Shown here in pieces: positions 3,851 to 64,000 of a stretch of 64,000 nt of DNA. How positions within the stretch are numbered: position 1 is the first letter of the stretch; the number at the start of each line of letters is the position of its first letter. This DNA comes from Phallusia mammillata. Taxonomy: Eukaryota. A program made the translations under genes and the position numbers. Location of the stretch: positions 7,688,001-7,752,000 of the forward strand of contig OZ281501.1 in NCBI GenBank assembly GCA_965637545.1. The letters are read 5' to 3'. The notes under the pieces are model-generated. The model had not been told where the DNA came from and did no database searches. It saw only the letters and a program-made list of their open reading frames with translations.

Positions 3851-4352
3851 GAAAAATATAGCCCAATAGACACTAAAAATTATTTAAGACATAGCACCCA
3901 CTCATAACATCAAACATTTGTTTATGCAACAAAATCGTAGGCAAACTGACATTTAATTTTCTTTTATTTATTGCTGTAAAATCTCTGAAAACATCGTTCA
4001 TATTTGTTGAAGCAAAATTGTTCGCAGGTGCTATCAAGGCGACTAACGTAATTTAAACCCGTTTAGTCCCACAGTTTGTGAGCCTGAAGTATGATGGATC
4101 TATGCGCGCCAACGTTTTGTTTGTTCTGTGGTCATGGGTTTAGTCAAAACTCCTAAATTGTCAGATTGAAAGAGTTTTCCAGAAAAGGGAGTCGAGTAAT
4201 TGGCAATAAGTTGGTTTGTGCAGCTCGAAGAAGTAGCTATTACCACAGAACTGTAGTCTAAATATGTGTCTTTATATTTTCTTTGTGAACATTACAATTG
4301 GGATATTTAGCCTACCTGCGATATAACTTCTCAAAAATGGTTCAGTGTATTT

Positions 4353-39922: not shown

Positions 39923-40742
39923 ATGGCTGCGAATTTCAACGAACTGGACAGTATCGACCTAGCGTCCCTGGCTATTGGTGGTTGTGGCGGTCTAAAACCA
40001 CAACCTACTACAGCAGGCTACAACCAGCGTTACAACGACAACATCAATGTGACTTATAACAATATAAACGACTGCGTGAGCCGCCCACCTAACTTGAACT
40101 CGTGTGCTGTGAGCGGTGCTGAACCTGTTAATGGCACCGTACCAACAACTGGACCTTACATGCCTCCGTCTGTTGCTGTCAAAAGTGAACCAAACGGTTT
40201 TCACCCAAACGTGCCCCCGAACCAAAACTCTTACCCCCAAGCAGCCCCACCTTCCCAGGGAGGTTTCCCTCCAAATGCTAACCAGCCCCGCAACGCAGCA
40301 TCTACTATGAAAGCGCTTGGTTTTCTGACCGAGCGTACGATCGAAAATTTCTTTAAAGACGGAAAGGGGGTTTCTCACGCCACCCCTTACCCACCTGTTT
40401 CGCGCAAATCGAGCTTAGGGGGACACGCACCCAAACTCGGCGAAACGCTGCCCCCCTTAAAGCGCTCACAGCCCTATTCAAATCCACGTGATATGTATAA
40501 TGCAAATTATCAAAACTATAACGGAGGCGCACTTCCAAATGGCCGTATGATGCAGCACCATCAGGCCTACGCCCACCATAGACGCCAAAATGGGTTACAA
40601 GCGGGTCCCTGGGTCCCAAATGATGGGGGTATGGGTATGGGACCCGGTTTGCCTCCTGTCAAAATGGAATGGAATGAGTTTAACGACCGTGGCATGCTTC
40701 GCCATGATGCTTATGCTCCTAACATGGGGTATTATCCTCATG
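39923..40742 (+). CDS. Large P/G/N/Q-rich coding exon, inferred RAR isoform-1 N-terminal extension (273 codons)
   Basis: Longest ORF in the window, higher GC, strong donor gtgagt; two psi-K-x-E motifs (VKSE, VKME). Confidence 0.85.
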
Positions 40743-43700
40743 GTGAGTTATACAGTTTCGGTGCAAGGTTGTTTATTTTAAAGGATAAATGTGACTTCCT
40801 CGGTTAAACCTAGTTTAGTTTAGGCTGGCGATTCATGTGGTTTTCTTGTACCAACTTGGACAGTGTTGTATATTGTATCAATTTTCATTTTACTAGTTTT
40901 TAAACTGAGCTTTCAGGTGTGCTTGTAACGTTTTTAAGTATTTAACCCTGTGGTATTTTGTTTTCAGATGGCAGCGATCGGCCGATAATTCGTGATGAAT
41001 CGTTTTCACCACCAGGTGGCGTGCACATGAACGGATTTCCAGGAGCTGAACGGATGAGAGGTAGGAGATGTTTTTTATTTGTTTTTTACAACATACACTG
41101 TGCCCATGGTTTCAAATTCCAACTCTTAAGGTTTACTGCGTTGTTCGTTAAAACGTCCAACTGTCAATTGTCAGGCTCAAAGCAAGCTTGTGCCGTTTGT
41201 CTGGTTCAAATTGCAACGATTAAGACAGTTTTAAACCAGCGGCAGTTTGGCATTGACAACTGTATAAAAGTGTATAAGCATGCTTTGGTCTGTTCACAAA
41301 TTGTAAAACTGATGCCTTAAGAACTTCATCAGAAATCGCAACTTAAATTCCAAGTTAAGATTACGTCAAGGCAGTGGGTTTTTCCACTGTATCGTCACAA
41401 TGTCGTCAGACAAATGCGACCACAGCCTGTTTGGTGATACAAGTAAACAACGGGCTTGTGCGGGAATGAGACAGCGCATTTGGTAGCAAGCAATTAATGT
41501 CTGAAAACCTATCACGTTTCGTGGTTCAGTCGAAGGCAAGCCGCTCACAAAAAGACGGAACACCTCAAATTTCCACTTGTCTTTGCCACTCTTTGTTTAT
41601 TATAGTATATACTGAAGAATTTCAAGCTTAGAAAACGCTGTGCTCAGATGAACAAATCTTAAACACAAATTTGGCCATCTACAGAGTTTTAACGAATAAC
41701 ACAGCTTTGCTGTTTGTAAACCGTGAGATATTTACACATATCGGGATATTTGTTGGATTTAAGATTTTTCAACTTTTGTTAATGCACCTTTGTAGCACTA
41801 AACAGCACCGCTTAAAAATTACCCACAAAATAATGTTGTTTATTCATTTCAAAAAAGTTGCTATTACACCATTGACAGAAACTCGCCATTTCTAAACTAT
41901 TTTTTAAGTTTTTAATCTTAGTAGGAAAATGACACCAGCAGTTTGCGAAAACGAGATGCGAAACTACCGTATTTTCCCTTATAAGACCAGTGAAAGTGCT
42001 CTTATAGAAAAGTTTCGGTTATCGTACAGTTTACTTTGTGGTCATTGTCTTGACATGCGGATACAAAACCAAAAGCACAATGTTTTGTTCCGAAACTATA
42101 CCTGCTACGTCTTTGTGATTTAAGTTTCACACGAAATATGAGGATCCGGTTTTGTTGTTGTTGGACCAACAGCTTTTTACAGCAAAGACAATTCATTCCT
42201 GAAAACCTTTTGCGTGATTTTTAAAAATACGTGCTTTCTTCACGTTTTAAAGGTTTTAAAGGGATATTTCAGTTTGTAAGATTACAAAATATACATTAGC
42301 AAGTTATATTTTTACAACCCGTTCAATTTTAGACAATTCCAACTTTTTTCAGCTGCTGTTGATCTAATAAAATGAACTTTAATTGAAAACCTTGATCTGA
42401 AAACAGTTAAAAACATAGAAACATTTTCACTAACTTTGAAAGTTTTGTTTTTCCAACGGTTCCTTTATATATTATTCGGGACTTTGTAAGCTTGGTTTAA
42501 ATGATTCTTAGTTGTTAGAGTAACGGATTTGCTTCAAAAACTGCCCCCAAAGACATGTAAAAAAGACTCAAGGAAAATGCAAGAGTACAAAAGCGCAAAT
42601 ATATCAGAACAAACATGAACAACAAATCTTTGATCTTAATTAAAAAATTACAGTCCGGAAATACGAAGCGGCCACGAAACTTTTCTTATTAAATTATAAA
42701 CATGGCCGTCGTGTCAAGTTGTCCCAAATTCAATTTAAATGTGGCGTGAAGTCATAAAACGTGATTGAAGACTAGACTGGGCGTAACTAACATGTCCAAC
42801 AACCCAGCAACTATTTGAACATGGCAACGTCGACAGATTTTAAAAATTAAACCAAAGTCGACTGTTCTTTTCTATTTTAGGTGCTGGTTTACTGTTCTTA
42901 AAACAACAACATCTGTTTTATCAGTAGCAGATTCGATCTACACATACATATTCAAATACGAACTGTTGCCTTATGCGCTATCTTGTTTATCATTACATCA
43001 TCGCATTACAGCGCTTGCCTCACTTCGTCAAGGATAAAGAGTAAACAATTCCAAAATAACCACTGTCAGCCCCCGCAAGTAGCAGTACAACAACAAAAAC
43101 GCGACACTTTTTAGCACGAAAGTCTTCTGTAAATATTTTGTCCATCTTCAGTTTATTGATGTTTTCTACGCCTCCATGGCTTGTTGCTGTCGTTCGACGT
43201 TAAGCTCCGGAAATTGTCTCTCGTGCATTCGCTCCCTATAATCCGGATGCATTTTCTCCTTCAAGTTTATTTACGCGTTCCGATTTTGCTTGGCCTGAAA
43301 TCTTGTGCTTGGTCTTATTGTAAACAAGTAGGGGTATAACATTTCTTGTCTTTCGCGTGTATTGGGAATATCTGATGAAACCTTTCCCAAGGTTGTCTGT
43401 TTTGTAATTTCGTCACAGGGTGTTCGCAACCAACTCAATTAACTAGTTTTACGCTAATTATTGCGTTAAGATACGTGTTTTAGTTAGTTGATTGTGTTTC
43501 ACAAGACATCTCAGCACGTTTAGTTTATCATTAAATGGATAGATTGACATGTTTGTCTTTGTAAGAAATCAGAATTTGTTTAAATTCAACATTTTGTTTT
43601 AATTAGTTATGGTGGTTTTGAAAACCTTGCTTTTTCCACATATTTTCTGTGAATTTTTACAAATCTTTAGTTAAACTATATTCACTTTTCCTCTACGCGG

Positions 43701-46700
43701 GCCTGACCCCCAATTTCGATAAAGAAAGAGTGGCTCAAATTTATTTAAAGCTACACAAGTAACATATATGTATTTGTCATAGTATGTTGCATTGTGATTC
43801 ACAGGTCCCCAAAATGTGAATTTTACAACAACTTAGTATTTACCAAAGTTCAAGACCTGGAAGTCTCAAGTTTGGTAGTTAATGCATTTCAAACGATTTA
43901 ATTCTTAAGCAATTTACCCACACCTAATCGTTCAAACTCAATCCACTTTAATCTTGCGAAGTCGTGCATCTAAGGTGTGTAGTGGTATACCATGTTGGTC
44001 AGAGCCGATTGTGGTCGCTTGACTTTTTGATCAAGCTTCACTATAAACAAGTACCATGCCGCGTTGTCTGTTGCGTTGGAACAGCATTAAAGAAGTTATA
44101 CAGTGCTGAAGTCATTAACATATAACGCACTCGTTATTTTGTACAGCGGGATTCTCGTTTTGGAATAGATATACGTTGTTTTCCTTCTCTTTACATTTGT
44201 AAGCTTTACAGCTATATTTGTGGTCTATATGGAGATATAAATTTTATTTTGTTAATACTGTACAGGCTAATCACTTAAAACCTGTTTTAATCCATTAAGA
44301 TACTGAGAATCGAGAGTGTTTTCCAAGTAACAGTATCAGTCAATGAATTTACATGGAATATATACATTTCGTCTAACTGGCATATTCAGTTTCCACAAAA
44401 CCACAAGATAAAACATAATAAAACCACATTGTTTCCAATGAAATTAATGCAATGAAACATTTATAATAGTCGTATGGGGCCAGCAATGTGATACATTTGT
44501 CGAATCGAAATTTAAAGCTATTTATTTGCGCTTTCGTAACCTTAACAACGTAAGCCTTTATTCTAAGAAACACACGCAATTCGCTTGCTTCATGAAAGCC
44601 AGTTATTCAGTAATAATTGCAGACCCATCTCACCCATACCAAACCTAGTTCAGCAAATACAAGTTCCAATTAACGATACCAAGGTGCTGATTATTGTCAC
44701 AAGCCAACGGTTAGTTTAATTTTTTCGGATATGTTTTCTCCTGTGCCGGTGGTTAGCTGCTAATTTACCAATTCTTTGATGCTTTTTTGCTCAAAGTTAC
44801 AATGTTTTGCAACAGGAAACATGACCCGTGGGCTTGAGAAGGTTGTTACAAAAAAGACTGAACAATCGCTTGTAAGAATTTGGGTAATGTTATGTGTATA
44901 TTTTTTACATTAACATCAACATTAAAAGGTACGTCTGTTCGTGTGTATGTACAAGTTCATTGTGTACACTAAGGACCACTGTGACCAACGTTGGGTATGT
45001 ACGCAGTAGCCACACACCAATTAAAGCGCAGCATATATTTCATGTGCTCTAAGAAAGAGAATTGGCCTTTCTTTTCCTTTGAGACGTTAAAGTCAAAAAT
45101 TGTAATGTTTGGTATATATATTTCTTAAATTTAAAACCAACAGTTTCTTATCTAACTTAGTAATTTTTACAAATCTCTATTTCGAAATGTTAGAAATTTC
45201 CACATTACAGCAGGCTAAAGGTTACATAAGCGTGGCGCTTATCGTGTTGCGCGTGGCGTATGTCGAAATATCACCGAGGGTAATGAAAACATTTGCAGAT
45301 TCGATTGTAAGATAACAGTTCCCATGTACCACAAAATGATCGTACTTGGACAGATCAAAATTCTCCTTTAGCAGCGAGTGAGATTGTTTGAGTGCATTGT
45401 TTTTATTTCCGTTCTGTAATCCCCTCGGATTTCCGATTTGTAGGTAAATGGCGTGTTGTCTTAACCGGTCGCCATTGACCGAGAGGGGCATTTAATGTTA
45501 TGTAACAAAGACAAGACATGCTTTATATAACCAAAGTAAAACACTGGGAAACAATTAAAAGCCTTAAAAGAACTTTTTTCGTCATGATTTACTAAAAGAC
45601 CCATCGTATACAATGCACACACAATCAAAAACATCCCTTTGACTATATATTTACCATGTTTTCGATAGAATAAATATCTCTTAACAACTAATCACCCAAA
45701 GGGTCACAGATTAAGTAGCCACAATTTACTGGTACGATATCGTCAATAGGCATCATATGGCTCTTTCCTACGTGGTATTGGCTGCAGCCGCAAGCCAACT
45801 GATGGTATCTCTTCAGATCGTTACAGTTTTGCGGCTTAGAAGAGGCACAGAGATAAGTGCGAATATCGTTTTTTACTCAATGGTAGTGGCACTTCATGCC
45901 TAGTGTTGGTAGTATGCCCTGCTTTTCTTTTTCACAAACCCCTTATTTTGTGAAATATATCATGAAAATACGATATGCTTTATTATTTAACGTTTCGACA
46001 AATGCTCATGTCATCATCAGTGATGAGGGGTTACACCAGTTTTTAAACGCTTGAGTCACATAACTTCTATTTGGGCCGTTATTTTTATCATTAAACTTAT
46101 GAAAAGATTTATGTATAGTGTTCCAAAATATATTGGAAGTGATTTGGTGGTCACAAGAAATTGGTTTTCTAGGTTGAAGTAAAGTGTTGCACATTTTGTT
46201 TTGTCCTTTGTTTAATTTTTTCGCTGTTCATTTAAAATAGTTGCCTTGGGCATTAAAAGTATGTTGCAGGCGTTTACGCGGCCTGACAACGCAAATTTGC
46301 TTCGTCGCAGGGCGTAATCCAAATGTTTACACAAACGCGCAAACACAAACAAACTCTGAGCGCCTCCGCACCCTGCCACCCTGTGGCGCTAGAGTGCCCT
46401 CATACAAGCTACAACCGGGTTCAGCGCAAGGTCAGCACCGGCTTGGGGGTTCATCTGGAGGTCACGCCGCGCGTCGAGGCGACCGGTTCCGCATGGTTGC
46501 GCGTGGCTGGAGGCGCTGGTATCTTCTTTGCACTGATTTTATGGTTGCGAGTTTTGCGGTCACACCGGGAATTCATGACCGTATTCGACTATGAGCTTCG
46601 CTTCTAAGGTTCCGCTACGTATGAATGGAATACTAGCACGGGCAATTGGCTTTGCTAAACTTGAATTGGAACTGCGCTGTTGGTTTGTTTCATACGTGGC

Positions 46701-49700
46701 AAACCAAGTGTCATTTCATTACATAGTCAAATATACATTTTCCGAACATTTTTGTTGTAAATTTTCACCTCACAAAAGGATTGTTACCATTTGTTGCAAG
46801 CCATGGCGCTTAAACGGACAGTTTTATGCCGAAAGGATGCATTGAGAGTTATTACGGCCTAATTAGTCACATTTGATACCTAGGCGTCAATGCTCTTCAA
46901 CTCACAACACATCACTGCTTATGTTAGATATTCCTAGGAAAAGGGCAGCTTGCTTGACGTCGGCTGGGTTAAGCCGCTTATTAGCTTAAGACAGCCAATC
47001 GCTCTATCACGACGAGGAAACAAGGTGTACCGTGCGAACGTGAAAACCGGTACCTTTCTCCGTCCCAGCCCAAATCCAGGCACTGATTATTTTACAAACA
47101 CTGTCGCATGTCGCTTGTCTCGTTTAAGTCGTGGGAAAATCAACTTTCGACTTGTGCGATGACTTCTTTGGTGGTTTCGGGAGTGACAACGTGTCCTTGT
47201 TTCTTGGAGATTGTGTTGTAAGGAATCAAAACTCTTACAGTGCTATTGTGATAGCGGTTGTTGATAGTATTCACTATGGCGGTTGGGTGTTTGACCAAGC
47301 TAAGTCCATGGTGTTTTTCATTAGTAATGGTATAGCTACAATACTTAAATTTTTTGCTAGAAAGATTTGTACAAGCCTCTATACAACGTATTAAACCAAA
47401 GTGAATTCCAGTTGCTTATGACAAGCACTTACAAAAACTATCTTTGTCTGTGGTGTGGCTTTCACAATTCTCTACCATCAAACCTGTTTACGAAGCTGGT
47501 GCAGACGAGATCGTGATGGTATGACCGCCGCAAGCTGCTTAACTTGAGCTGCGATTCTTGCCGACTTCATATATCACTTTTAATTAATATCGTACGCTTG
47601 AGGCAATACTACGCAGAATGTTTGATTTCGTTATGCAAAATGCGGTCTATATAAACCGCTTTAGCCGCTTTGAATTCTTTGTACCAACCTCTAGGCGTAA
47701 AACCACCAATAAACATGACTGTTTTGTAAACATAATATCACCATAATATCTTAAGCCCTTAAAATATCTTTCAACGTGGGTATTTCGTCATATCTTAACT
47801 GCATAAAGATCAAACTAATGTCATTTTGGGGTTTTAGGTTCGTTTAGGTTTGAACCTAAGCCCAGTTTTTTTCATTTTCCTTCCTAAAGTTTTGGCTGGC
47901 GCCAATTTCATTAGTGTATCATAACTTTCGCTATAGCGATACTTCAGCATACGTTAAGGATTTCCTATTGGCTGAAAACATCGGTGTGCAACAGGCAAGG
48001 GTCCAACTTGCCTTTATTGAGCTGTAATGGGTTTTGTGATTTCTTGCCATTTCGCAATCATCTTACACAATTCAACTATCCACTTGGGATGCCAAATAGA
48101 ACACAGAATTATAAGTACATGTCCAAGAGCTAGTGTTGAATGTTGCACACTTAAAACATGCTTACGTGCATGTTGCATACTGTGCAATCAAAATATAGAA
48201 AGCAAAACTCATGCCAGGTTTTGTGTGACGTTGTATGGGAAACATGGGTTGGTCTATAATTATTCCAAGTTTTCACAAGCAACCTCTGCAATTACAACTC
48301 CCGGTTTGGTAAGACAATTTCACTGGCTTGCTTTGCTATACCTAAACTTGTTATTCGCTGTCTTTGTAATAACCCTCTTTGTTTTACTCTGGTTAGCCGA
48401 TCTTAAATCCATTGCCCATTATTATATCCGCAAGTGGGCGCTATTGTCACTGTGGTTGCTTTATGTCGTGCCTGTGCAGGACGGACAGTTGCAAAGATTG
48501 ATTTAATTGTATATTTTCTTAACTTTCTTCTCTAAAATCTTTGATGGAATTTAAAGATAAAAATATACCCCAAATATATTTTAGGTTCATATATGAAAAA
48601 TCCCCAACCATATTAAATTTTACTCTGATGGGTTTCCCCCGGTCGTTTAACACATCTTTTGGTTAGCAACTAAGCACGTCGTATAATCGTTTTTGCCAGG
48701 GTAGAATTTGTAGCACAAAAAAGTTTGTAAAATTTCGTATTGCTTTTGGCGGCATGGTTTCATCTAATGTCATACGTTATTGGCAAGCACACTAAAGTCT
48801 AAATACAGACTTCTAGTGTGTAAGTTACGCACATCAGAACATGTTGGCATCAAACTCAACAAACATCCTACAAAATTACGGCGAAAAGCGCAGAGGATGA
48901 TGTTTTGACGAGTTTATCGTGTCGTTACTCAGTTAAGTTAAAACAACACACGTAGCGGTATGTTCATGACGATTCGACCTGCCCTGTGCTGACTGGTAGT
49001 GATATTTCTATCGGAAATGAGTCAATCGCATCCGAACCTAACTGTAATTGACGTGCACTAAACTGATGGATACCTCGCACCTGTCACTTGTACACTTATT
49101 TGGTCTGTGTGACAACTGATTAGTTGTAGGTGTGAGGCGCTACCCCAGTGTTTGTAGAGAGGTTGTAATTGGACCAGACGTAGGATTTTTTACGCATTTT
49201 ATTGATTGACTGCTTTTGTAATTGCTGTGCCCCTTCCGCAAAGATTGCGATTGTTATTCGTTTAACGCTGATTTATTTTTAAAAAAATGCAGTAGCGGTC
49301 GATAATTAACTGAGGTATACTACATCGTTTGACCCTAATTGATCTTTCGGGTAACCTTTAAGCCCTTGGACATAAAAATCGAATTTATTCACATTTTGGG
49401 CAACCAATAAACGTCCCCATTGTCTTTTGGTACAGTTTCACAAAAGAGCTTAATATCAAACAATGCACAAATTACATAACACACAAATATTTTGTTAGAA
49501 CCAAACACGGCGTTGCGGTGACATAACAGTTAAGGGTTACGACTTTATGTACGTCATTGCAACTATCATTTATTACTGTGCATCATTAGTCTATTGTGAC
49601 AATTGCTACCGTTGAAATGACTCATTTAGACGTGATCTCATCGCGCTGTGATCGGTTACTATTCACGAATTCAAACGTTACCAATGGGTGTACGAGATCA

Positions 49701-52700
49701 CATTGCTGTAACATAATCCCTCTCCTTGAATGCTGGGCCTTAGTTCTACAACCTCTGTCATTGTTTTGTCATTAATGGAAAACAGACAAGGGCACATTGG
49801 GTAGTCTGTTTTATTTCACCAGCCCTCTTGGTGAGACTATCAAGCTTTAATACGTGATGTGTCATAATGATTAATTATACATGCCAAATGACGAGGGAAA
49901 TTTATGTAATATACTCTGTTTGCGTAATGTATTCAATTTTGATCGTTTGTAAATGTTTTCTTTTTTTTGAAAGGTTAGAATTTACATCATTTTATGGCGC
50001 AGTTTATTTTTACCTCAATTAACTTTTATACCCAATACCTAACAAGCCGAAGGGTGGGCAAAGAGTCATCTGACTCTTTTTTAAAAGAATTTCTGTCTGT
50101 ATAATAATTACAAACACCATAAATAGAAAAAAAAGGTTTTAAGTGGCTTTGTACAGTCATGCTCTAAAACAAGAAAATTATAATCAAACCACTTAATCAA
50201 TAAGTTATTTAGTCCTTCCTTATGCCCATTTTAAGCAACTTAACATTAAACTGCCGTGAGAGCTATTACGATTTCCATGTAACTTGGCATTGAAACTTAG
50301 CAGAGATCTAACCCCGAGCCATCGATATTCCCGCAGCTGTGCTAGTGGTTGCCAGTATGGGTTGTCTAATATGCTAGATTAGTCTCAAGCAATTACATTA
50401 CAAGGGCGATGACAGACTTTTAAAGCAGCAGCTCTGTGAGATTATTCTTAAGTTGATTCGACCTAACGATTCGTCCCTGTGATAACATTACTGAGGTGTT
50501 GAAAAGGTAATTGGTATTTATTTTCTGTCAATCAAGTACCGTTGGTTTTGCGCAATTGACTTGCTTCCCAGGGGGTTGTGGTTGAAATCTAAGCATCCTA
50601 TACAAGTTTTGTTTGGTAATACAAGCAAACGTAAGAAGAACAAAAAAACTGTTTTATTTTTGCCTTTGTTCTGTTTCAGTGCAAAACATATTAACACGCA
50701 GTTGTTCAATGTTTTTTACTACACTATGTTTTTTGCCAAGTAATGCCAAATTTTGGTGGTTGATAAACCGTTCCCACGATCGTGTAGGCCTTTGTGACGT
50801 CACATAGCATCTCTGGTTTTGCATCTTGAGCAAAGTGACGTGATACTCGATTCGCTTCAACCTGAAAAAAAAACATTTTTGATAAAACACAGCTTTTGCG
50901 TATAGTATTTACTACATAGTTGCACGAAAGTATTGTAGCATGGTATGACTTGACCGTGCAATTTGCAAGTGAACTCAAAGGCATTGGTATTTACCGAGAT
51001 ATTAAAATCAATTATATATTTGCTCTTTCCACAAAGACCGCTCGTATCTACGTATATACTGGTTTATTTCTTAAGTTCGACCTTTAAGATGTTGAACTCG
51101 TCTTAGGTCTTAAGCTTCTGCGGCTGTATGCCCTTGGGAAGATTTGCGCAATTGATATAATTGTTGGCTCAGTCTGATACACAGTCGCCGTGTTATTTGT
51201 AATTATGAGCTGAATGTCGAGTATTTTAAGTAGCACAATTCAACTGGTTGCATGTACAGTCTTTTGATTTGTACTTCATTACGAAACATGTTGTTTTGAC
51301 CTAAGGTTTGGTTGCATCAATGTAACACCGTATTCTAGGGTAATAGCTTTACCATAATTGTTTCCACACAATCTAAGCTAAACAAGACCACGAAAAAATA
51401 GTATAGCTTTGTAATTATGTCAAATTGAACCTGTAGCCTGTACATTGTAACAAATACCCGTTCGGACACTAGGTATCAATTTCCTAAGTCAAAACAATGG
51501 AAATCCAAACAGCCTTAGGCAACGTACTGTTTGTAATAGTTTGCTTTTCCACCCCAAGGGGACGAAAACCCGCCGTTCGTAATCGATTTGAGATTTTCCT
51601 TGATAGAGTGGGCGCCAACCGCTAAGTCTTAATCTGTCTTCTCTATTGTTTTGAACGTAATTCGCTTACACCTTGACGCTGGTATGACCTCATGATCGAC
51701 ACCGGTTCAATGTTGTTACCGTTAATGATGACAGAACATTAAATGGAAAGAATATGCAACAATCTTTTATGACATGTTGTTTTGTGGGGAATTGTAACAT
51801 ACGGTAAAATCTGCGTTATGTATTCGACCAAAAGGTTGAAAAAAATGCATGATATACTCATACGCATGTAAGCTTCCATATCAAGAACATTTTAATGCAG
51901 TTTTTACAATATATAGTCGTGGGTAGATGTGTTGAGGACTTATAGTAAAATATCAGGTTTATTCTGGTAAACGACCAATTTGAAATTCACAATCCTGATG
52001 GTCCCTTTAAATATATGTTCTATGGTAGCAGCCCCCAAAAATGCGGTTTGGCCGAGTTTGCTAGCTGTACTGTTTACTGCTTGTGAACAGATACCTTGTA
52101 GTAGTCACAGGCAGAGCATAATCCTGTTCTTGACATAGTTTCGTATCCGTACCCTTAGCATTGTATTCTGCACTAACGTTTACATTTAGACGAGGTTCAA
52201 TAGCACGCAGCGCATTGAGTAAGCACTTGAACAGGCATATGAAACTACTTGGCCTAGTTCCAATGCCGTGTTAAAAACAACAATCCCATTTGTAAATACA
52301 TTCCTTAAAACGAGATAGGAAAACAATTTTGGTTCAAATTTTTGGGATAATACTGAACAGGTTATTTTTTCCCATAGGTCCAAGTTTCAAACATGTAGGA
52401 TGTAATTTCGAAATATACGTGATGTTAACTTGGCATTTTATTGTTCAATGCAATTATTGGCTTCAATGTTATGTTGCTGGGGTCGGCCAGGCAACGACGT
52501 ATTACGAAACAAATTGTATTAAAATTTATTTACGGTAAATATGACTTCCGCCAATTATTATTCACCCGATGTCACATGTAATTAAATTACTTTTGTTTAC
52601 TGTAACGTGGATCCATTTTTTTTTGTTTTTGGTAGTTTATGTAACTCAGTCATATACGGCACAATTGTAGCGGTATCTTGTGGATGTTTTTTTTTGCGAG

Positions 52701-55700
52701 GAAGTATTTCCTTACTGCTCTGACTTCACACGCTATACCTGCGTTTAGGAGGTCTTCAGACGTTTGCGTGTATTTTGATTGGCACTACGAGGGGAAGCGA
52801 AAATGGGTCTTCCGAGTTCACCAGGTTGTCTAAAATTCATTTTAATTTTATTTCTTGTTTTTCCGTATCCTTTTTTCACATCTGATAACACTAATTTTTT
52901 GATTGGGTTTCTATTGGTAGGCCTAAGTTTAAAAAGTGTCATTTGGTCAACGATGAAATTAAAATGGATCAAAATTCAATTTCCCTATACGCAGAGTAGC
53001 TTAAACGAGCAGTGCAGTACTGGCTGTTTTAAAGCAGGGTTCTGACTACTATGTTAAACAGCCAGTCCTAATTGCTGTCAGTCTTTTACCAAGTTTCATT
53101 TCCAAGTGACAAGCGTTAGTGAAGGCTGTCAGACATTATACTAGAGTTTTTTTGCCATTTCCTTTCTTAACCCATCAATCATACCACACTTACCTGTGCT
53201 GATGACTTAAATCCCATTGGTTCTCACAATAATTTTATTCCGCCTTGTAATGCCTTGCACTCCTGTGAACCCAGTATCTCACCTTTTAACCGCACGCCAA
53301 CACATTAAAGGAAGCCAGCTATCATAGATGTGACCGGAATTGCGATAAAATACGTGGTAACAAAGATATTTACAAAAAATATGAAGAGCATGTGGCCATA
53401 TCCCTTAGTTAATTCACTAACAGTGGTTTAGTAAACATTGCAACATATAGATAAGCATCGAATGAAAAATTTGTAAGCCAATTAATTCATTTTCTTGTTT
53501 GGTAATATTTGTGCTAACCCGTTTCTGTTCCCTAACTGTAAGGTTTATACACTTTTAGATTCATTCAATAGTGATAAAAAGCATGTTTACGATAGGGTAT
53601 GCATAAAAAGTTGGGCTTTAGTTTCTGAAAACCACTTTGGTAATTTACCATTTTGACCCCACGCTTAAACATTAAGGGTTTCTAAACTGGTCTCTGTCCT
53701 TTATTAATTGACACAAAAATGTAATATAAGTTTCGTAGGTTACATAGAAAAAAAAAAAAAAAAAAAAAAAAATTTTCCTAAATTGGTAGACAATAACTTT
53801 CTATATACATAATACGAAAATAGTTTGAGTGAAGAATTTTCGGAAACGTTTAACTTATTTTCGATTTCGGGTTACCTTGATTGATTATGAGTTCACCTAA
53901 ATATTTACTAAACAAAATTCAGAACGAAGTTAGTAGAAAAAGTCAAAAGGTGAACCACAGCATATTTTCCACTTTGTCAAATCTCGATTATCTTTAGCTA
54001 CATTTATTTTACTGTTAATGGGTTACTTTAGCTGACTAACGATCCAGTGTATTTTTAAAACCTTAGCGTCCTCGTTTGACGTTTTGACTCTTCTGTGGTA
54101 CCCAGTATTAAAGCGTTGGTGTAAAAGGATTTATTTGGTTCACCAGCTGAAAGGAAATGTTGACATTTACAGAAGCAGAGGCCGCGTCTTACACAAACAC
54201 ACAATCTATATAATATTATCATTAAACTGTATGCAAGCAGTGGCATCACAGAAATGACCTTTCTATGACCTGTTCCGCGAACTCGCCACGTCTTGCGTTT
54301 TCATCGGTTGTAGGAATTTGATTTTCCTGAGATTCTGTGGTCTGTTGCCATTTCGTTTCCAGTCTGGTTGCGGGTTTGTCGATTTAAATACAAACTGGGC
54401 TTTTTGTACTGTTGCTGTTTCGGGTTGGCCGGTTGCAGGTTGGCGCAGCGCTTGGTTACCACAAATTTAATATCATGCGGAAATACGCAATTCGTACCAA
54501 AGCGGCTACCGACAGGATTGTTTACGTGCAAATGCTGGGCCGCGAGAGAAAGGCGCAGGCGATTAAGAGTCAAAGGCGCGACAGAACGAGAAAAAGGCAA
54601 CCGATGACGAGAGAAGAAGAGAGAAAAAGAGCAATGCGTGAGCGGGGCCGCAGAATTTTTTGGTACTGGTTGCCAAACAGGCATTGGGTGTTTCTGTGTG
54701 TGCTAGGCTTGATGTACTGCGCTGCTGACGACAGTAGTGGCCTTATCCGCCAGCCAGGAAGTCGACATTGCGCCTGATCGCTGTTGTACATTGCATGTAG
54801 TGCGGTGGCCAACGCATTGATAAGAGCATTGCGCCGTGTAATAAACTTGTCAGTTTCCCACGTTTGCAGTTTGAAATAGCTTACCGTAAACCAGTGCAGA
54901 AGCAATCTATATTATACCATTAGTGGAAGCTGTTTTGCAGTGTAAAAACGTGTTGCCAAAAAGCTACCATACATCCGTTATCTGTATGATCTAGTTCGTA
55001 GTTTTTTCTGGATTAAAATAAGTGTAAACTATTTTAGTTTGTCTGCTTGCGTGTTAAACATGCAGTCAGCAGCTCGTTAAACCATCACGTAATGCACAAG
55101 GCGTGGATTTTGCGTGTCTGTTGCCTAATGATAATGATTACCACAATCCAGTGGTACAAGGTCAAACCTGGGTCATCGTGAGGCTCGAATTGTCGAATGT
55201 GTTAATCCAGTTGTCTTGTTACATCACAATGGCCTACCTTAGGGTTTTTCCCGCGTTTTATATTACTGCAGAAAAGATAGCAGATTCAATTTAATTAAAA
55301 GCTTTATTCTATGTTGTAGCTGTTGGAGGCAGATAAATTCGGAAATAATAACCCAAAGCGTTCAAAGTTTGCAGAAAATGTCTGTTTAGATTTTGCCACA
55401 GCCCCAATCAGTTGTTTATGTCGTGACGCAAGCCATATGAATATTGCATGTGGTTTGCGTTGCTCGGGTTTACGAAATTAAGCCCTTGTCTAGTCAGCAG
55501 ACTGTTAAACCTAATTATTATTATACTCTGTGTATTCTGAACAGCTTTGTGACTCAAAACATAGGTTGTCATACACTTTACAAAACACTGCTTGTGGCAC
55601 GTTTCCATGCTGCTGCAAGAGTGACTACAAATAGCAACTTTGCTACAAAAACAACGTTTTGAACCATCAAAAATCAAAATCTTCATCGTAATTTGACTCG

Positions 55701-58700
55701 ATCACTGCCATCATAATGACGATGGAATTTCAACAGCAATGGAGGAATCGCATGAACGGGATTCTGATGGACATTTTTACCCCAACAACCAGCAGTATGG
55801 GTGGGGGTATGGGCAATGGTGTGGGCTGTATGTATGGCGGTATGCATACAGTGATGGATTCACCACCACCTTTGCATAATCTCTCTATTAACCCGCAGAA
55901 TAATTATCACCACAACCAATTTTACCAATGGGAGAACAATCAAAGATGTATGTATTCTCTGTTGTTTTTTTCATGAGGTTTTTAGTTTTTCTCGATGCAA
56001 AGTTGTTTTTAAAACTCCATAAATGTCGATAAGCGATAATTTTCTTGAAAAAAAAACTGTTTGGAAGCCTAAAGCAAAACTATGCATCCAATTAAATTAA
56101 GGTTTAATTAAGAATGTATAAATTTTAATTGTTTTGCCAAACTTTGTGCTCTATGCTTTGCGTAATGAAAAATAGGAAAGTACTGTCACAGTCAACATGG
56201 GGAATTGTTTAGCTATTTTAGCTGTCCGTCAAAAGGAAATCACTTCCGTGCTGTGTTTGTTGATACACCTGGTCAATTTGCAGCCGTATATAGTTGTTTT
56301 GAAATCTGGACAATGTGACCCATTGCAAGTTCACACCGCGCTGTAATCGGTGGTCAAAAAACCCAGCATGTGTATACACCTTAGGCGATGCGTCGTGGTT
56401 TGTTGCCTTTTGCGTCCGAACTAAACTTTTGTTTGTGGCAGGAGCTTCTAACAAGGCACTGTCTAATCACGCAAACTGTTTGCTCTTTACCAAGCGCGCT
56501 TTTTGGATCCCTTCCGAACCATGCGTTGTGCACTACTGCACTGTTAGGTCTTTGGGTCATTTTTTCTTGGCTGGTTACCGAAACTCATATCATGCTACCG
56601 TTTTAAATACGTTATGATAGCAATTTTTGTTTCATGATTCTTAACTAACAAAAGGGCGACAGACCGTATAATGTGTTGTTTAACTTGACAAGTTTGGTTG
56701 TAGCAAGACCAAAACTTTGCCACGCGTCAAGCAGGCATGTGCAAAACGATTTGTTGCTACATAACAGCGTCTTGTTAAACGAGCTTAACGTATATTGGTC
56801 TTGAGGCGAAACGGCACTTCGCCGATCCCGAGGGACAGTGCATTAAATACCCAAGGGAGTGGCAACAAATGATTTGGCGTTGGTTCTGTGATCGTTCTAC
56901 AGGGCCTTAACTGATGTCGGCGACGTTTTATATATAGACACGCCAATGGGGCATGTTTCAGCAAGACTAAAGAATCAAAGTTGCAGCGGTACCTCTTTAT
57001 CCATTGGTCATCTGATATTTTGTCTTAGTGTACTTCCCAACATTACTTTCCAGACCACATACTGGACTTTCTACTAGTCCCACTGGAAAAACAACCACCT
57101 TTTATTTCTATTCCCCTTAGTCCAATGGTATCAATTTACTACAAAAAAAAACATTGTTCTGTTCGAAGTAATAAACTTCAAAACATTTGCATTATGTCTT
57201 TCAGTTCTTATTTCAAGCGCATCCGACCATACAGTTTGTAAGTCTTATGACCTTTTTGACCTTGACAACCGTGAAATTTACCCTTCACTTACCAAAACAA
57301 ATGGACTGACAACCGATAATAACGTCTTTGCTTAGCCGAAATCAATTCCGTGAAAAAAAAAGCAAAAAACTAATAATGTAATCAATTCTTTCTGTGCTTG
57401 CTTGGAAATAAAGTCAAAAACTCTTTGTATCTTATCAATAGTAATGTCGATTATCAGTGTAATTATTAACATTACGCACTCCTTTAAAGCAGAATACAGT
57501 TAAAAATAAGGACTTTTTAAAGATTGTTAAAAATATTGTTATGGCTGAAGCCAAAAATGTCTATGTAGACCATGCTCTAGCCATACCGTCGTCATGAGCG
57601 GGCAAAATATTTGTGTGTTGCAATGTGAACACGATGTGCAATAACGACGCAGCAATACAACTCACGTTGCACAACTATATCAGTCTCGTTTTGCTCACGT
57701 TTTGGCTACGAGATGTTCTTCATTTATTTGTTCGGATAATTTGCCAACACAACGATAGATGACACGAATTCACTGCATCCAACGAGCAAGTCACGCTTGT
57801 ATTCGATCTAACTTCCCCGCATGTGATGTTGTACTGTGACGAGAGTTTGTCACTTTGCGTCGAGTTAACTGCAAAGAAATGTGGTGCAATGGCGTAGGTG
57901 GCCAGCAGAAAGGATGTGAAAATTCTAACCCTTCCCGTTCTGTATACCTTTTTCGTCCAAAACAAAACTTAGCATTAGAATTTTCATCGGTGCAAAATTA
58001 TTTCGGTTGTCAATAAGTGTATTTGGTGTTTTTAGCCCGGTTATCTGTTTTAGGTCCATGTCTAGTCTTTTTAAGTATCTGTGACATTGTAGCTTGTAGG
58101 TGCGTTTTGGATAAGTTGTGTGATAATAGTCTACTTAACTCCTCAAGCTTTTCAAACCAGTTGCATTGCTGCAACCGTCAACTAAAAGCAATTTCTCTTA
58201 CACATAATCTTCTAATCTTCTGTCATCATCCAAGGAATATGACTCACATGTTGTTCAATCTCGTGTCTGTGTTTACCATAAACATTTCTAAACTTTCTGG
58301 CAAACAATTTAAAAATGCATGACCAAGTCTATGCCCTTTATTGGTAACGCAAACTATAATCTAATTACCAAAGTGCGGGATTATGCTTGAAAGTTTTTGC
58401 TGATTTTTTGCCCTTTCATGATTCTTTTGTTGTCGGCGGTGGTGTTTTAACTGTAAACACCTTCGGTAGACGGAGGTAATCAATCTTAATCGTTTTTTTG
58501 TAAGTTTTAAGCAAGCTTTTAAACAATGCGGCGGTCTGTTTAAATACGGCCCCTTATAAGGTATTCCCTCATATGTGTCTATGTTTTTGTGTTCATAAGA
58601 AGTTAATTGCAAGAAATAACGGTTGCATAGGTTTGTGTCCGTATGTGGTTATATGCGATAGGTTGTTGTAGCGCAGGTCGCATGTTTGTCTGCTGTGTTC

Positions 58701-60751
58701 TGTTTTATGTTGTTTGCTCGTCGCCGCATCTCCGCAAACACAAACGGCGTTCCAGGAATTCCAAAGCCAAACTCAACATTTCTGCACCCGTACAGACATT
58801 TAAGTTGTCGACCGTTTTTTGATGTACATAATTCAGACTGCAAGTCCGGCATTTTGCTCGACCCGCTGGCATGACCAACAAACCGCTATTGGCGTTTGAA
58901 ATGCTGACGCAGATGCATTTCAATGCGTCAGAAGTTAACCGTCGCAGATCTGCTGCGTTTGAATGATTAACGAGAGTCGAATGTGCTTTGATGTGGCAGT
59001 AAACAGGCCCCGACTGACTAATTGCGACAAACTGACCGTCAGTGTAATTAGGCTACATGCTGGCAATTTCACGGCCCATTTGTTCATGTACAATGCCAAT
59101 ATCTTAAAATTGCGTTTTACTGCTTGTTGACAGCTTGTACAGCTTGTCGTAAGACCATGGTTTATTGTAGTCGTTTCGATGGACAAATGATTTGCTTTAG
59201 GATAATAAAAACTACAATTGTGTCACTTGCTATCTGATGACTTTGTAAAACGCCTACCCTTGGATGTGTAATACAAAAAGCGACTAGTTTATGGTATTAC
59301 GTTGCACTCTTGATGGCACAACATCAATATTTCGTACAGGTGACATTATTCTAAAAATTGCCCGGGTTTTCCTGCAACCTTTTGTTATTTTAAACAAGGG
59401 AAACCATAGCCCTTCAACCTGTTCGCAGACCACACAGCCATTACCTCTTCCATGTTTGTCATTTAATTAGTTGCAGATCGCACTTAGTATTAGAACCCGC
59501 TTTTCTCTTGTAGTGTATGGAAGCAAAGGCACATTTTGAATTCCTCGTGACTGTAAGAGCAGTGCCAGTGACGCACAACGCAAAATGTCCACAACTCTAC
59601 CACTTTACCGCTTTGTCGTTTGAGTGACACTTGATCAGTTGAGAAGCATGTTGCCTTTAGTGTCTCCGTCCACTCCAACACTCTACTCTCAACGAACACA
59701 CTTTTATGCGTTGTTTTGTGCAAACAAACTGATATAAGTGATTGAGAATGCCCATGTTCACCACGTTTTCAAAAAAAAATGCAAGTAGAAATGTAAAAAC
59801 ATAACATTCTAGGACGAATTAACAACATAAACACATATAGAACCGGTGACAGTGTTCTTAGTCGATGTGTAACTTGCAATCTTGTTAAATTAAAATGCAA
59901 CATCAGTGAATTACCCAGTAGTCTGTGACAAATGGGAAACGTTCTTTCTGCAAGCTTCTGTAAAAGGTTCCTTGATGTGGTTATGGGTGGGGAACGAATG
60001 TTTTAGCCTTGCCTTTACAACTGACAGTTGATGAGCTCTTCCACCTTTCAAGCTGAAATCAGTTGCAAGAGTGTTGGTAGTTATCAAACCTTATGTGTCC
60101 ATCAATAATCTCTGCTCGTTGGTACGCCACGCTGTTTGAAACAACGGCCCTCACCACTTCAAGCGGCCTATGTCGCACCTTACCGGACGAAATACCTCTC
60201 AAAATCACTTCACTGTGCGTTTTTCCACTTTATTTGTGCGTTTCATTCACAATCGATAGAATAGTCGTCATATACTGGTGCATTCTTTTGAGTTAAAAGA
60301 AAGATTATACTCGAACCGTTTGAATCTAAAAACTTCCTGTGGCGTTGTGAACTTGAGTGTCTACTATTTTCAGTATCTTAAGGAAAGCTTGTGTAAACGT
60401 TACATCAAAGTCTTAAACAAATCAAACATAACTTAGTCGTTATTCAACCCTGTCGGTTGGATGTATTGGAATTTCCAACCACACTGTCTATTGGCTTTCA
60501 CTTTTAATCCCCAAGAATTTTATTCATAAAATTAAATTTATTGTATTTTTTTTTCAGCATCACCAGACAGTGTGGGCTTGTCTTCAACTGGGAGCAGCTA
60601 TTCAGGTTCCGAATCCGAAGGTCTAAGCCACGTGGGCCAGTCTTGTCCACCTTCTCCACCACCACCTCCTCGCACCTACAAACCATGCTTCGTTTGTGGC
60701 GACAAGTCATCTGGATATCATTACGGCGTTGCTTCCTGCGAAGGCTGCAAG
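39923..60751 (+). CDS. RAR: Retinoic acid receptor (NR1B), long isoform-1-like form, 5' part: exons 39923-40742, 40968-41060, 60558-60751; continues beyond the window
   Basis: ATG at 39923; CAT G/gtgagt at 40743; ttttcag/AT at 40968; AGA G/gtagga at 41061; tttttttcag/CA at 60558. All phase 1 and in frame. The 93-bp exon encodes [11 protein letters not shown], resembling vertebrate RARalpha1 region A (TPGGGHLNGYP). Linkage across the 19.5-kb intron is inferred. Confidence 0.75.
40968..41060 (+). CDS. RAR: 93-bp phase 1-1 exon, RAR region-A-like ([31 protein letters not shown])
   Basis: Canonical splice sites; PGGxH(M/L)NG(F/Y)P motif shared with vertebrate RARalpha1. Confidence 0.8.
46418..46434 (+). 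promoter_or_regulatory. Perfect DR5 retinoic acid response element
   Basis: GGTTCA-gcgca-AGGTCA. Confidence 0.8.
46448..46464 (+). promoter_or_regulatory. Perfect DR5 retinoic acid response element (second of tandem pair)
   Basis: GGTTCA-tctgg-AGGTCA, starting exactly 30 bp after the first. Confidence 0.8.
53748..53772 (+). repeat. Poly(A) tract (25 nt)
   Basis: Directly visible homopolymer; no associated retroelement body recognised. Confidence 0.9.
54255..54271 (-). promoter_or_regulatory. Perfect DR5 retinoic acid response element
   Basis: TGACCT-ttcta-TGACCT (AGGTCA-tagaa-AGGTCA on the minus strand), at the 5' edge of a GC/purine-rich promoter-like block (54280-54850). Confidence 0.75.
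55159..55175 (+). promoter_or_regulatory. Perfect DR5 retinoic acid response element
   Basis: AGGTCA-aacct-GGGTCA, about 540 bp upstream of the ATG at 55716. Confidence 0.75.
55716..55947 (+). CDS. RAR: Alternative first coding exon of RAR (short, isoform-2-like region A, 77 codons)
   Basis: [23 protein letters not shown]...FYQWENNQR then T/gtatgt (strong donor, phase 1), in frame with exon 60558 (S-SPDSVG...). Confidence 0.8.
60558..60751 (+). CDS. RAR: RAR common exon: region B plus first C4 zinc finger
   Basis: SPDSVG...[36 protein letters not shown]/gt versus vertebrate [38 protein letters not shown]; the intron right after CEGCK is also the vertebrate RAR position. Confidence 0.97.
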
Positions 60752-63310: not shown

Positions 63311-63356
63311 CTTAATTGGTTAATCAATCTATAGAAAAACAGCGCGCTACCAATAT

Positions 63357-64000
63357 TTATGTGTCCCCTTCCCTGAAGGGGACACATATTGATTTTACTC
63401 AAAATGTTTTTGTTTTTTTCTTATTTTTTCTTCTACCCAAAGTTTGTCCGACTCGTTTTTCCATCAAATCCTTGATGGATTTGGATGAAATTTACACAGA
63501 TGGTAGATGTAGTTATGTAGATGTGCATCCCACTTTGTTTTTGTTGATAACCCCAGTATTTACCCCGCTAGCCCCCTAAAATGGGTATTTTTTCCCCGAA
63601 GTTTGTCCGACTCGTTTTTCCGTCAAATGTTTGATGGCTTTGGCTGAAATTTACACAAATGGTAGATGTAGTTATGTAGATGTGCATCCCACTTTGTTTT
63701 TGTTGATAACCCCAGTATTTACCCCGCTCGCCCCCTAAAATGGGTGTTTTTACCCCGAAGTTTGTCCGACTTGTTTTACCATCAAATGTTTGATGGATTT
63801 GGCTGAAATTTACACAGATGGTAGATATAGTTATGTAGATGTGCATCCCACTTTGTTTTGTTGATAACCCCGTTATTTACCCCGTAAGCCCCTAAAATGG
63901 GTGAGTTTTTAAACAGTGTCAGAATTGGCTGAAATTTGGATTTCTTGTATAGTATGCCATTTATATGTCCCTATGACGTCAGAAACATTAACGGTTGTTG
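63357..64000 (+). mobile_element. Helentron/HINE-like non-autonomous element with three 159-bp central tandem repeats; may run off the window
   Basis: The 35-bp 5' end matches 30294-30328 with one mismatch, including the 9-bp-stem hairpin; T-rich tract; AGTTTGTCCGAC recurs at 63441, 63600 and 63759. Confidence 0.75.

What the first reader, a model, noticed from the sequence alone, without database searches (positions are those of the whole stretch)
46418..60751. Putative retinoic-acid autoregulatory module: four perfect DR5 RAREs concentrated upstream of an internal RAR first exon
Seen: four perfect RGKTCA-N5-RGKTCA elements (46418, 46448, 54255, 55159), all within 9.3 kb upstream of the ATG exon at 55716; my manual scan found none elsewhere in the 64 kb. 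A rough estimate assuming about 36% GC gives about 0.1 perfect DR5 per window by chance. Established: vertebrate RAR isoform-2 promoters (best known RARbeta2) are RA-inducible through DR5 elements bound by RAR/RXR. Inference: this invertebrate-chordate-type RAR has a constitutive distal promoter plus an RA-inducible internal promoter. RA-responsiveness of ascidian RAR transcripts has, from memory, been reported; I cannot verify whether this cis-architecture has been described.
Basis: partly seen in the sequence, partly recalled or inferred. Interest (0 to 1): 0.85.

Follow-up and report, generated by a model that had tools for sequence, protein, structure and literature searches.

The report
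Conserved tandem DR5 elements inside RAR
The retinoic acid receptor gene of the sea squirt Phallusia carries textbook retinoic-acid response elements ahead of its second-isoform exon, and four distantly related sea squirts keep one pair of them in the same intron although the rest of that intron no longer aligns, so the receptor gene probably responds to its own signal, as in vertebrates.

Summary
There are four perfect RGKTCA-N5-RGKTCA elements, at 46418, 46448, 54255(-) and 55159, and none elsewhere in the window. Shuffles predict 0.10. This is also the highest count among 7,920 control motif/spacing combinations.

The window is Phallusia mammillata RAR, not Ciona. The 55716 exon is real. 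RNA contigs join 55947 to the DBD exon at 60558, and the mRNA starts with the ascidian spliced leader at acceptor 55543-55544. Its transcription start is therefore not visible.

The key new result is that the twin DR5 (46418/46448) has a counterpart in the same intron, between the A1 and A2 exons, in Ciona, Clavelina and Styela. Each has four half-sites, in 30-bp or 22-bp register. Half-site columns are 81% identical and flanks 26%. The introns are otherwise unalignable. All 12 perfect DR5s in 221 kb of four RAR loci lie in this intron.

The two proximal DR5s are lineage-specific: degenerate in a close relative and absent in the other species.

A selectively maintained RAR/RXR-type response module is well supported. 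RA inducibility, and which promoter it serves, are untested. A published Ciona title reports no RAR upregulation by RA. I rate it a new member of a known kind, of moderately high interest. The scan had already noted the twin on this same window.

The parts
46418..46434 (+). DR5 number 1 of the conserved tandem module (GGTTCA gcgca AGGTCA)
   Evidence: It aligns with the first DR5 of Clavelina, Ciona and Styela.
46448..46464 (+). DR5 number 2 of the tandem module (GGTTCA tctgg AGGTCA), 30 bp start-to-start from number 1
   Evidence: Clavelina has the same 30-bp register. Ciona and Styela have a 22-bp register.
54255..54271 (-). Proximal perfect DR5 (AGGTCA tagaa AGGTCA on the - strand); lineage-specific
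   Evidence: The only candidate counterpart in L001 has 2 core mismatches and an uncertain alignment.
54459..54864 (.). Conserved non-coding block between the two proximal DR5s, with GATA-, ETS- and Fox-like words; candidate promoter or enhancer of the A2 form
   Evidence: 65% identity over 431 columns to L001:257-666, E 6e-34. Sequence.
55159..55175 (+). Proximal perfect DR5 (AGGTCA aacct GGGTCA), 385 bp upstream of the trans-splice acceptor; lineage-specific
   Evidence: The collinear L001 site, AAGTCA tacat CGGTCA, has 2 mismatches.
55543..55544 (+). AG acceptor for spliced-leader trans-splicing of the A2 mRNA
   Evidence: Contigs of X9 and X5 carry GTACGGG + ATTCTATTTGAATA immediately before 55543. 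Sequence context.
55545..55947 (+). A2 exon: 5' UTR 55545-55715, ATG at 55716, donor GT at 55948
   Evidence: The joint 55947->60558 (GT..AG) appears in all four runs laid. The N-terminus is conserved in Polyandrocarpa, Clavelina, C. savignyi, L001 and L002.
60558..60751 (+). Common exon: B region plus first zinc finger of the RAR DNA-binding domain
39923..40742 (+). A1 exon a (start codon of the 694-aa isoform)
   Evidence: 100% identical to residues 1-273 of the P. mammillata RAR P0156. Donor GTGAGT.
40968..41060 (+). A1 exon b, spliced to 60558
   Evidence: The loose end at 60556 in X5 and X1 reads ...GAACGGATGAG, which is the end of this exon.
7752..7871 (+). Candidate first coding exon of a third, most distal N-terminal variant (A0)
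   Evidence: tblastn of Ciona Q4H2W2 (P0003) residues 22-64, 56% identity. ORF 8896-9387 also resembles P0003.

Best explanation
The tandem DR5 at 46418-46464 is a selectively maintained nuclear-receptor response module inside the RAR gene. It has four RGKTCA half-sites that can hold two RXR/RAR heterodimers about three helical turns apart, so on roughly the same face of the DNA. It gives the gene a direct retinoic-acid or RAR input, that is, an autoregulatory loop. The most likely target is the form that starts at the downstream A2 exon, which is SL trans-spliced at 55544. This is the tunicate counterpart of the RA-inducible isoform-2 transcripts of vertebrate RARs. The two further perfect DR5s at 54255 and 55159 flank a conserved block 0.7-1.1 kb upstream of the A2 acceptor. 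They are best read as younger, Phallusia-lineage additions to the same homotypic cluster.

Shown here: the motifs, their excess over chance, the exon structure and trans-splicing, and the four-species conservation of the tandem.

Inferred: binding by RAR/RXR, the sign of the response, the ligand dependence and the promoter served.
For: 1. Excess in the window: 4 perfect DR5s against 0.10 expected, and the top count of 7,920 control cells.
2. The same architecture sits in the same intron in three other ascidians. Ciona L003 19126-19164 has four perfect half-sites with an 11-bp period, against 0.02 expected. Clavelina L004 has two DR5s at 4152 and 4182, 30 bp apart as in Phallusia, against 0.02 expected. 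Styela L005 53371-53409 has four half-sites with an 11-bp period, one imperfect, against 0.10 expected.
3. All 12 perfect DR5s in 221 kb of the four loci lie in the A1->A2 intron, which makes up about 50 kb of that total.
4. Conservation is confined to the half-sites. Pairwise identity is 81% in half-site columns, 45% in the spacers and 26% in the flanks. The four introns give no BLAST alignment at E<0.01.
5. The half-sites fit the RAR/RXR consensus that holds for vertebrates and amphioxus, where 12 of 13 conserved DR5s bound RAR/RXR in vitro (PMC5247814).
6. Against the human RARB promoter RARE GGTTCACCGAAAGTTCA (PMC8997856), the first DR5 matches at 16 of 17 bases in Clavelina and 15 of 17 in Ciona.
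7. The A2 exon is a genuine alternative 5' exon with its own spliced-leader 5' end.
8. Styela also has two extra perfect DR5s in the same intron (52284, 68123). This parallels the two extra sites in Phallusia.
Against: 1. Nothing here shows binding or an RA response.
2. Nagatomo et al. [quoted passage not shown] I could not read the paper. Whether it would have detected an isoform-specific or post-embryonic response is unknown.
3. In every species the module lies closer to the A1 exon than to the A2 exon. In Phallusia it is 5.4 kb from A1 and 9.1 kb from the A2 acceptor. The promoter it serves is therefore open.
4. In run X1 no contig covers 54800-55535 although the intron downstream of A2 is covered. 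This speaks weakly against an A2 transcript that starts as far upstream as the module. The tool warns that gaps in coverage prove nothing.
5. The two proximal DR5s are not conserved even in the close relative L001.
6. Perfect DR3, DR4 and DR6 are also over-represented in the window. Some excess of direct repeats of this hexamer is therefore not specific to spacing 5.
Confidence: 0.6

Rival explanations
1. The module is functional and conserved but is read mainly by another nuclear receptor that accepts direct repeats, such as COUP-TF, TR, NR1H/NR1I-type receptors with RXR, or TR2/4. It would then be a cross-regulatory input into RAR rather than an autoregulatory one.
For: The half-site RGKTCA is shared by many receptors. 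Perfect DR3, DR4 and DR6 are also in excess in the window, and Styela has DR1, DR2, DR3 and DR4 around its RAR gene. Ciona has 17 NR genes (PMC7827873).
Against: Only spacing 5 is conserved across all four species, and it is conserved twice per module. By established knowledge DR5 is the classical RAR/RXR spacing. The first DR5 nearly equals the vertebrate RARB element.
Confidence: 0.15
2. RAR/RXR binds the module, but the main role is ligand-independent or repressive. Unliganded receptor with corepressors would keep one RAR form silent or set its spatial limits. Exogenous RA would then not raise RAR mRNA in embryos.
For: This would reconcile a conserved RARE with the published Ciona title reporting no upregulation of RAR by RA. 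RAR/RXR can mediate RA-dependent repression (PMC5247814 background).
Against: There is no direct evidence. In amphioxus, RAR expression served as the normalised positive control in RA-treatment qPCR. In Botrylloides, RAR is switched on during regeneration together with Raldh (PMC1808485).
Confidence: 0.15
3. The module is an enhancer for the upstream A1 or A0 promoters, or for all RAR promoters, and has no particular link to the A2 exon.
For: In all four species it lies nearer the A1 exon: 1.3-5.4 kb downstream of it, against 3.9-17.8 kb upstream of A2.
Against: Extra perfect DR5s accumulate toward the A2 exon in Phallusia (54255, 55159) and Styela (68123). In vertebrates the RARE-bearing promoter is the internal one.
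Confidence: 0.25
4. The two proximal DR5s (54255, 55159) are non-functional chance or drift products near a real conserved promoter block. Only the twin matters.
For: Both are degenerate in L001, with core mismatches. Neither gives a significant BLAST hit, while the block between them does. No DR5 with 1 mismatch or fewer lies within 4.5 kb upstream of A2 in L002, and none lies near A2 in Ciona or Clavelina.
Against: About 0.1 perfect DR5s are expected in all 64 kb, so two more within 1.5 kb of the exon are very unlikely by chance. Styela shows the same pattern of additional DR5s in this intron.
Confidence: 0.4

Closest known systems
Vertebrate RARbeta2 promoter RARE (betaRARE, GGTTCACCGAAAGTTCA)
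   Same: It is a DR5 of RGKTCA half-sites, in the RAR gene itself, upstream of the exon encoding the isoform-2 (A2) N-terminus and downstream of the isoform-1 exons. The Clavelina and Ciona first DR5s match it at 16 and 15 of 17 bases.
   Different: [quoted passage not shown] The ascidian module is a tandem of two DR5s, kilobases from the A2 exon. The A2 mRNA is SL trans-spliced, so its start site is unknown. RA induction is not shown.
RAREs of the vertebrate RARalpha2 and RARgamma2 internal promoters (recalled from memory, not checked here)
   Same: They show the same logic: an internal promoter for the A2-type isoform carries a DR5.
   Different: The same differences apply as for RARbeta2. 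I could not verify their sequences with the tools.
DR5 cluster of the amphioxus CYP26 locus (Carvalho et al. 2017, PMC5247814)
   Same: It is a homotypic cluster of conserved DR5s around an RA-pathway gene in an invertebrate chordate. It was found by the same consensus, and 12 of 13 sites bound RAR/RXR in vitro.
   Different: The gene is different, so the feedback is negative, through RA degradation. The sites are scattered rather than phased in tandem, and conservation was assessed only within one genus.
Ciona Hox1 epidermal RARE (Kanda et al. 2009, as cited in PMC3227721)
   Same: It is the only experimentally supported ascidian RARE I could trace, and it shows that ascidian RAR/RXR uses such elements.
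   Different: It lies in a target gene, not in RAR.

Membership tests
DR5-type retinoic acid response element | Two RGKTCA half-sites in direct orientation separated by 5 nt | tested here: met
   Four perfect matches. The consensus is as given in PMC5247814.
DR5-type retinoic acid response element | Occurrence above chance and evolutionary retention of the half-sites | tested here: met
   Met for the twin: four species, with half-site identity 81% against 26% in the flanks. Not met for 54255 and 55159.
DR5-type retinoic acid response element | Bound by the RAR/RXR heterodimer | not testable with these tools
   This needs EMSA, ChIP or CUT&RUN.
DR5-type retinoic acid response element | Confers RA-dependent transcription on a reporter or on the endogenous gene | not testable with these tools
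   There are no RA-treatment data. The Ciona literature title is negative for total RAR mRNA.
Autoregulated RAR isoform-2 (P2) promoter of the RARbeta2 type | A separate 5' exon encoding an A2 N-terminus, spliced to the common B/DBD exon | tested here: met
   Joint 55947->60558 and a spliced-leader 5' end. The A2 peptide is conserved among ascidians.
Autoregulated RAR isoform-2 (P2) promoter of the RARbeta2 type | RARE immediately upstream of the TATA box or transcription start of that isoform | tested here: inconclusive
   The start site is hidden by trans-splicing. The conserved module is 9.1 kb and the nearest DR5 385 bp from the acceptor. No shared TATA lies downstream of the modules.
Autoregulated RAR isoform-2 (P2) promoter of the RARbeta2 type | The isoform-2 transcript is induced by RA | not tested
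   No runs with RA treatment were available, and read laying allowed one call only.

The most novel reading that the evidence does not exclude
The ascidian tandem DR5 is the true ortholog of the vertebrate RAR isoform-2 promoter RARE. On this reading, a DR5 of the GGTTCA-CCGAA-AGTTCA type, lying between the A1 and A2 exons of the single ancestral RAR gene, already mediated RA autoregulation in the common ancestor of tunicates and vertebrates. It has been kept for over 500 million years. That would make it one of the very few individual cis-regulatory sites traceable across that split, and it would imply that ascidian RAR is RA-responsive in contexts not yet examined, such as the A2 form, metamorphosis, budding or regeneration.
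Probability: 0.3. Interest if true: 0.8.

Novelty: new member of a known kind. Interest (0 to 1): 0.66.

Why it matters
Ascidian and vertebrate non-coding DNA hardly ever aligns, and ascidians are often described as having a reduced retinoic-acid response. Here a phased pair of perfect DR5s is kept in the same RAR intron across three ascidian orders. It is a ready-made, 50-bp, testable candidate for the RA input into RAR itself.

If it binds RAR/RXR, it gives three things:
- a compact natural RA reporter for ascidians;
- a way to re-examine the reported lack of RAR autoregulation in Ciona, isoform by isoform;
- a rare anchor for comparing cis-regulation between tunicates and vertebrates, at the isoform-2 promoters of RARalpha, beta and gamma.

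It also shows binding-site turnover directly. The core tandem is stable, while satellite DR5s come and go in Phallusia and Styela.

Tried and rejected
- Repeat or transposon origin of the DR5s: no repeat family covers them.
- tRNA or structured RNA at the GC-rich twin region: ARAGORN and Rfam found nothing in the window.
- Local-duplication artefact: rejected by the permuted-motif control on the real sequence, and because the spacers and flanks of the two twin units differ.
- Ciona as the source organism, my first guess from the spliced leader: rejected by the 100% match to the P. mammillata RAR.
- Bacterial-type promoter and terminator scan: uninformative for a eukaryote.
- Lookups of P0003, P0004, P0005 and P0152: no genomic record. 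Styela was reached through cluster member P0270.
- L002, an unnamed ascidian contig: it starts only 4.5 kb upstream of its A2 exon, so it cannot show whether the tandem exists there.
- Amphioxus RAR: I looked among representative hits and found lamprey and fish instead. One row was a human fusion protein, which I did not fetch or use.
- Papers: Fujiwara 2005 (Ci-RAR promoter) and Nagatomo 2003 are not held. No held paper describes DR5s in an ascidian RAR gene.
- The statement that Polyandrocarpa RAR mRNA is RA-inducible rests on my memory only and could not be verified.
Full report
**1. Observation**

A pattern search finds exactly four perfect RGKTCA-N5-RGKTCA elements in the 64 kb. They are at 46418 (+), 46448 (+), 54255 (-) and 55159 (+). 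Dinucleotide-preserving shuffles give 0.10, with a maximum of 1. A second-order Markov model gives 0.11.

Shuffles do not preserve local duplications, so I also used the real sequence as its own control. I counted all 720 column permutations of the degenerate hexamer at spacings 0 to 10. RGKTCA at spacing 5, with four matches, is the single highest of the 7,920 cells. None of the sites belongs to a repeat family. No tRNA or Rfam family lies in the window.

One-mismatch DR5s are not enriched. Perfect DR3 (57248), DR4 (1414, 30670) and DR6 (12740, 14278) also exceed expectation.

**2. The gene and the organism**

The exon at 60558-60751 encodes the B region and first zinc finger of an RAR. The long ORF from 39923 is 100% identical over 273 residues to the RAR of Phallusia mammillata (UniRef A0A6F9DPR7, P0156). 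The window is therefore Phallusia, not Ciona.

The exon map follows from that protein, the splice sites and the RNA contigs:
- A1a 39923-40742
- A1b 40968-41060
- A2 55545-55947, with the ATG at 55716
- common exon 60558-60751

A third, more distal N-terminal variant is indicated by similarity of 7752-7871 and of ORF 8896-9387 to the Ciona cDNA-derived protein Q4H2W2. A snurportin ORF (6191-7123) lies just upstream, as in Ciona. The RAR gene therefore occupies the window from about 7.7 kb to its end.

**3. The 55716 exon is real and trans-spliced**

I laid contigs of four public runs of the same organism on 54800-60799. All four show the joint 55947->60558 (GT..AG). Contigs from two runs end at 55543, preceded by GTACGGG and then ATTCTATTTGAATA. 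From my own knowledge, the second part is the 16-nt ascidian spliced leader, whose last AG coincides with the genomic acceptor AG at 55543-55544. The first part is the end of a template-switch adapter.

The A2 form is thus a separate mRNA with its own 5' end, but that end is made by trans-splicing, so the transcription start is not visible. Runs X5 and X1 also contain the A1b-to-60558 junction.

In X1 the intron downstream of A2 is covered, but nothing upstream of 55536 is. In X5 low coverage continues upstream of 54800. This hints at a start not far upstream of the exon. The tool warns that gaps in contig coverage prove nothing.

**4. A close relative**

A protein search with the A2 ORF found one Logan contig (L001, run DRR090687) from a close relative. 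It has 90% amino-acid identity in the exon, and its non-coding DNA aligns only in blocks.

The strong non-coding match is window 54459-54864 to L001:257-666 (65%, E 6e-34). This block lies between the two proximal DR5s and carries GATA-, ETS- and Fox-like words.

The DR5 at 55159 has a collinear counterpart, AAGTCA tacat CGGTCA, with two mismatches to the consensus. The DR5 at 54255 has at best a counterpart with two core mismatches and an uncertain alignment.

A more distant ascidian contig (L002) has the A2 and DBD exons but no DR5 with one mismatch or fewer in the 4.5 kb upstream of A2. The proximal DR5s are therefore lineage-specific.

**5. The twin is conserved across ascidians**

Through homologues of the common exon I fetched three annotated RAR loci:
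- Ciona intestinalis type A (L003)
- Clavelina lepadiformis (L004)
- Styela clava (L005)

I mapped the A1, A2 and DBD exons in each by tblastn. The perfect DR5s are as follows.

| Species | Site(s) | Arrangement | Expected by shuffles |
|---|---|---|---|
| Ciona | 19126-19164 | GGTTCA ccgaa GGGTCA cacct GGTTCA tggaa AGGTCA; four perfect half-sites, 11-bp period; the only DR5s in 41 kb | 0.02 |
| Clavelina | 4152 and 4182 | GGTTCA cctaa AGTTCA and AGGTCA tacaa AGTTCA; exactly 30 bp apart, as in Phallusia; the only two in 28 kb | 0.02 |
| Styela | 53371-53409 | AGGTCA aacaa AGGACA cacgg AGTTCA ttgaa GGGTCA; Ciona-type array with one imperfect half-site; further perfect DR5s at 52284 and 68123 | 0.10 |

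In every species the array is on the gene's strand and lies in the intron between the A1 and A2 exons. It is 1.3 to 5.4 kb downstream of A1 and 3.9 to 17.8 kb upstream of A2.

By my arithmetic, these introns sum to about 50 kb of the 221 kb scanned. All 12 perfect DR5s, in 8 separate sites or clusters, lie in them. That placement has a probability of about 7e-6 if sites fell at random.

The four introns give no BLAST alignment at E<0.01. In a four-way alignment of the modules the half-site columns are 81% identical pairwise, the 5-nt spacers 45% and the flanks 26%. The only length difference is 8 bp between half-sites 2 and 3. This is the footprint of selection on the binding sites themselves.

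**6. Relation to the vertebrate element**

[quoted passage not shown] The Clavelina first DR5 differs from it at one spacer base. The Ciona first DR5 shares GGTTCACCGAA and differs at two bases. The Phallusia first DR5 matches at 14 of 17.

The likeness, and the shared position between the isoform-1 and isoform-2 exons, are compatible with common descent. Convergence on an optimal RXR/RAR site cannot be excluded. The ascidian module is also not promoter-proximal in any way I could show.

**7. Literature**

No paper in the held library describes DR5s in an ascidian RAR gene. Two relevant papers are not held:
- Fujiwara 2005, Dev Dyn 232:1124, which dissected Ci-RAR upstream elements for muscle, CNS and epidermis (listed in PMC3580780).
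- Nagatomo et al. [quoted passage not shown]

The second is the main evidence against simple positive autoregulation. It concerns embryos and, presumably, total RAR mRNA.

Other context:
- In amphioxus, RAR expression served as the normalised positive control in RA-treatment qPCR, and conserved DR5s around CYP26 bind RAR/RXR (PMC5247814).
- In Botrylloides, RAR is switched on during regeneration together with Raldh (PMC1808485).
- The only RAR cDNA product of the budding ascidian Polyandrocarpa in the database (P0004) is of the A2 type.
- That its mRNA is RA-inducible is my recollection and could not be verified.

**8. Verdict**

A phased tandem of DR5s in the A1->A2 intron of RAR is an ancient, selectively maintained feature of ascidians.

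It is most probably an RXR/RAR-bound enhancer that feeds RA signalling back onto the receptor gene. The following remain to be tested:
- which promoter it serves;
- whether it activates or represses;
- whether the two Phallusia-specific proximal DR5s work.

Noticed in passing
window 6191-7123 (+): An intronless 310-aa ORF resembles snurportin-1. The same neighbour, with Pfam Snurportin1 hits, lies directly upstream of RAR in Ciona (L003 8884-9753). The snurportin-RAR linkage is therefore conserved between Phallusia and Ciona.
   Followed up: partly
window 7752-7871 and 8896-9387 (+): These are candidate exons of a third, most distal RAR N-terminal variant, similar to the N-terminus of Ciona Q4H2W2 (P0003). 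The RAR gene would then span more than 56 kb in Phallusia, against about 21 kb in Ciona.
   Followed up: partly
window 30663-30694: A compact cluster of half-sites on both strands reads as a perfect DR4, an ER3 and a one-mismatch DR1 at once (TGACCC cgta TGACCC aga GGTTCA). It lies in the large intron upstream of the A1 exon. I did not check conservation.
   Followed up: no
window 1414, 12740, 14278, 57248: Further perfect direct repeats of RGKTCA are present: DR4 at 1414, DR6 at 12740 and 14278, and DR3 at 57248. Each class is expected about 0.03-0.14 times. Together with the DR5s this makes nine perfect DR3-DR6 against about 0.35 expected.
   Followed up: partly
window 54459-54864: A 400-bp non-coding block is conserved with a close relative (L001). 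It carries TGATAAG (GATA-like), AGGAAGT (ETS-like) and TGTTTAC (Fox-like) words and a purine-rich stretch. The purine-rich stretch also weakly matches Clavelina about 1 kb upstream of its A2 exon (L004 8977-9030, E 0.37).
   Followed up: partly
window 46247 and L003 18990: The 10-mer TGGGCATTAA lies 171 bp upstream of the tandem DR5 in Phallusia and 136 bp upstream of it in Ciona. AATTGGTTT lies 150-260 bp upstream of the module in Phallusia, Clavelina and Styela. These may be co-factor sites or chance matches.
   Followed up: no
L005 2868, 6832, 7884, 53993: The Styela RAR locus also has a perfect DR2, DR4 and DR1 in the 10 kb upstream of the gene, and a DR3 600 bp downstream of its tandem module.
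   Followed up: no
window 63316-63846: Overlapping ORFs on both strands contain an internally repeated peptide (…YITISTICVNFSQ.HQTFDGKTSRTNFG…). This suggests a repeated or transposon-derived element at the end of the window.
   Followed up: no
same genome, about 11.2 Mb beyond the window (note s1-344581): Another first-stage note reports a minisatellite of DR5 elements in an 'RAR intron' far from this locus. This window holds the RAR gene, so that note may concern a different nuclear-receptor gene. I could not inspect it.
   Followed up: no
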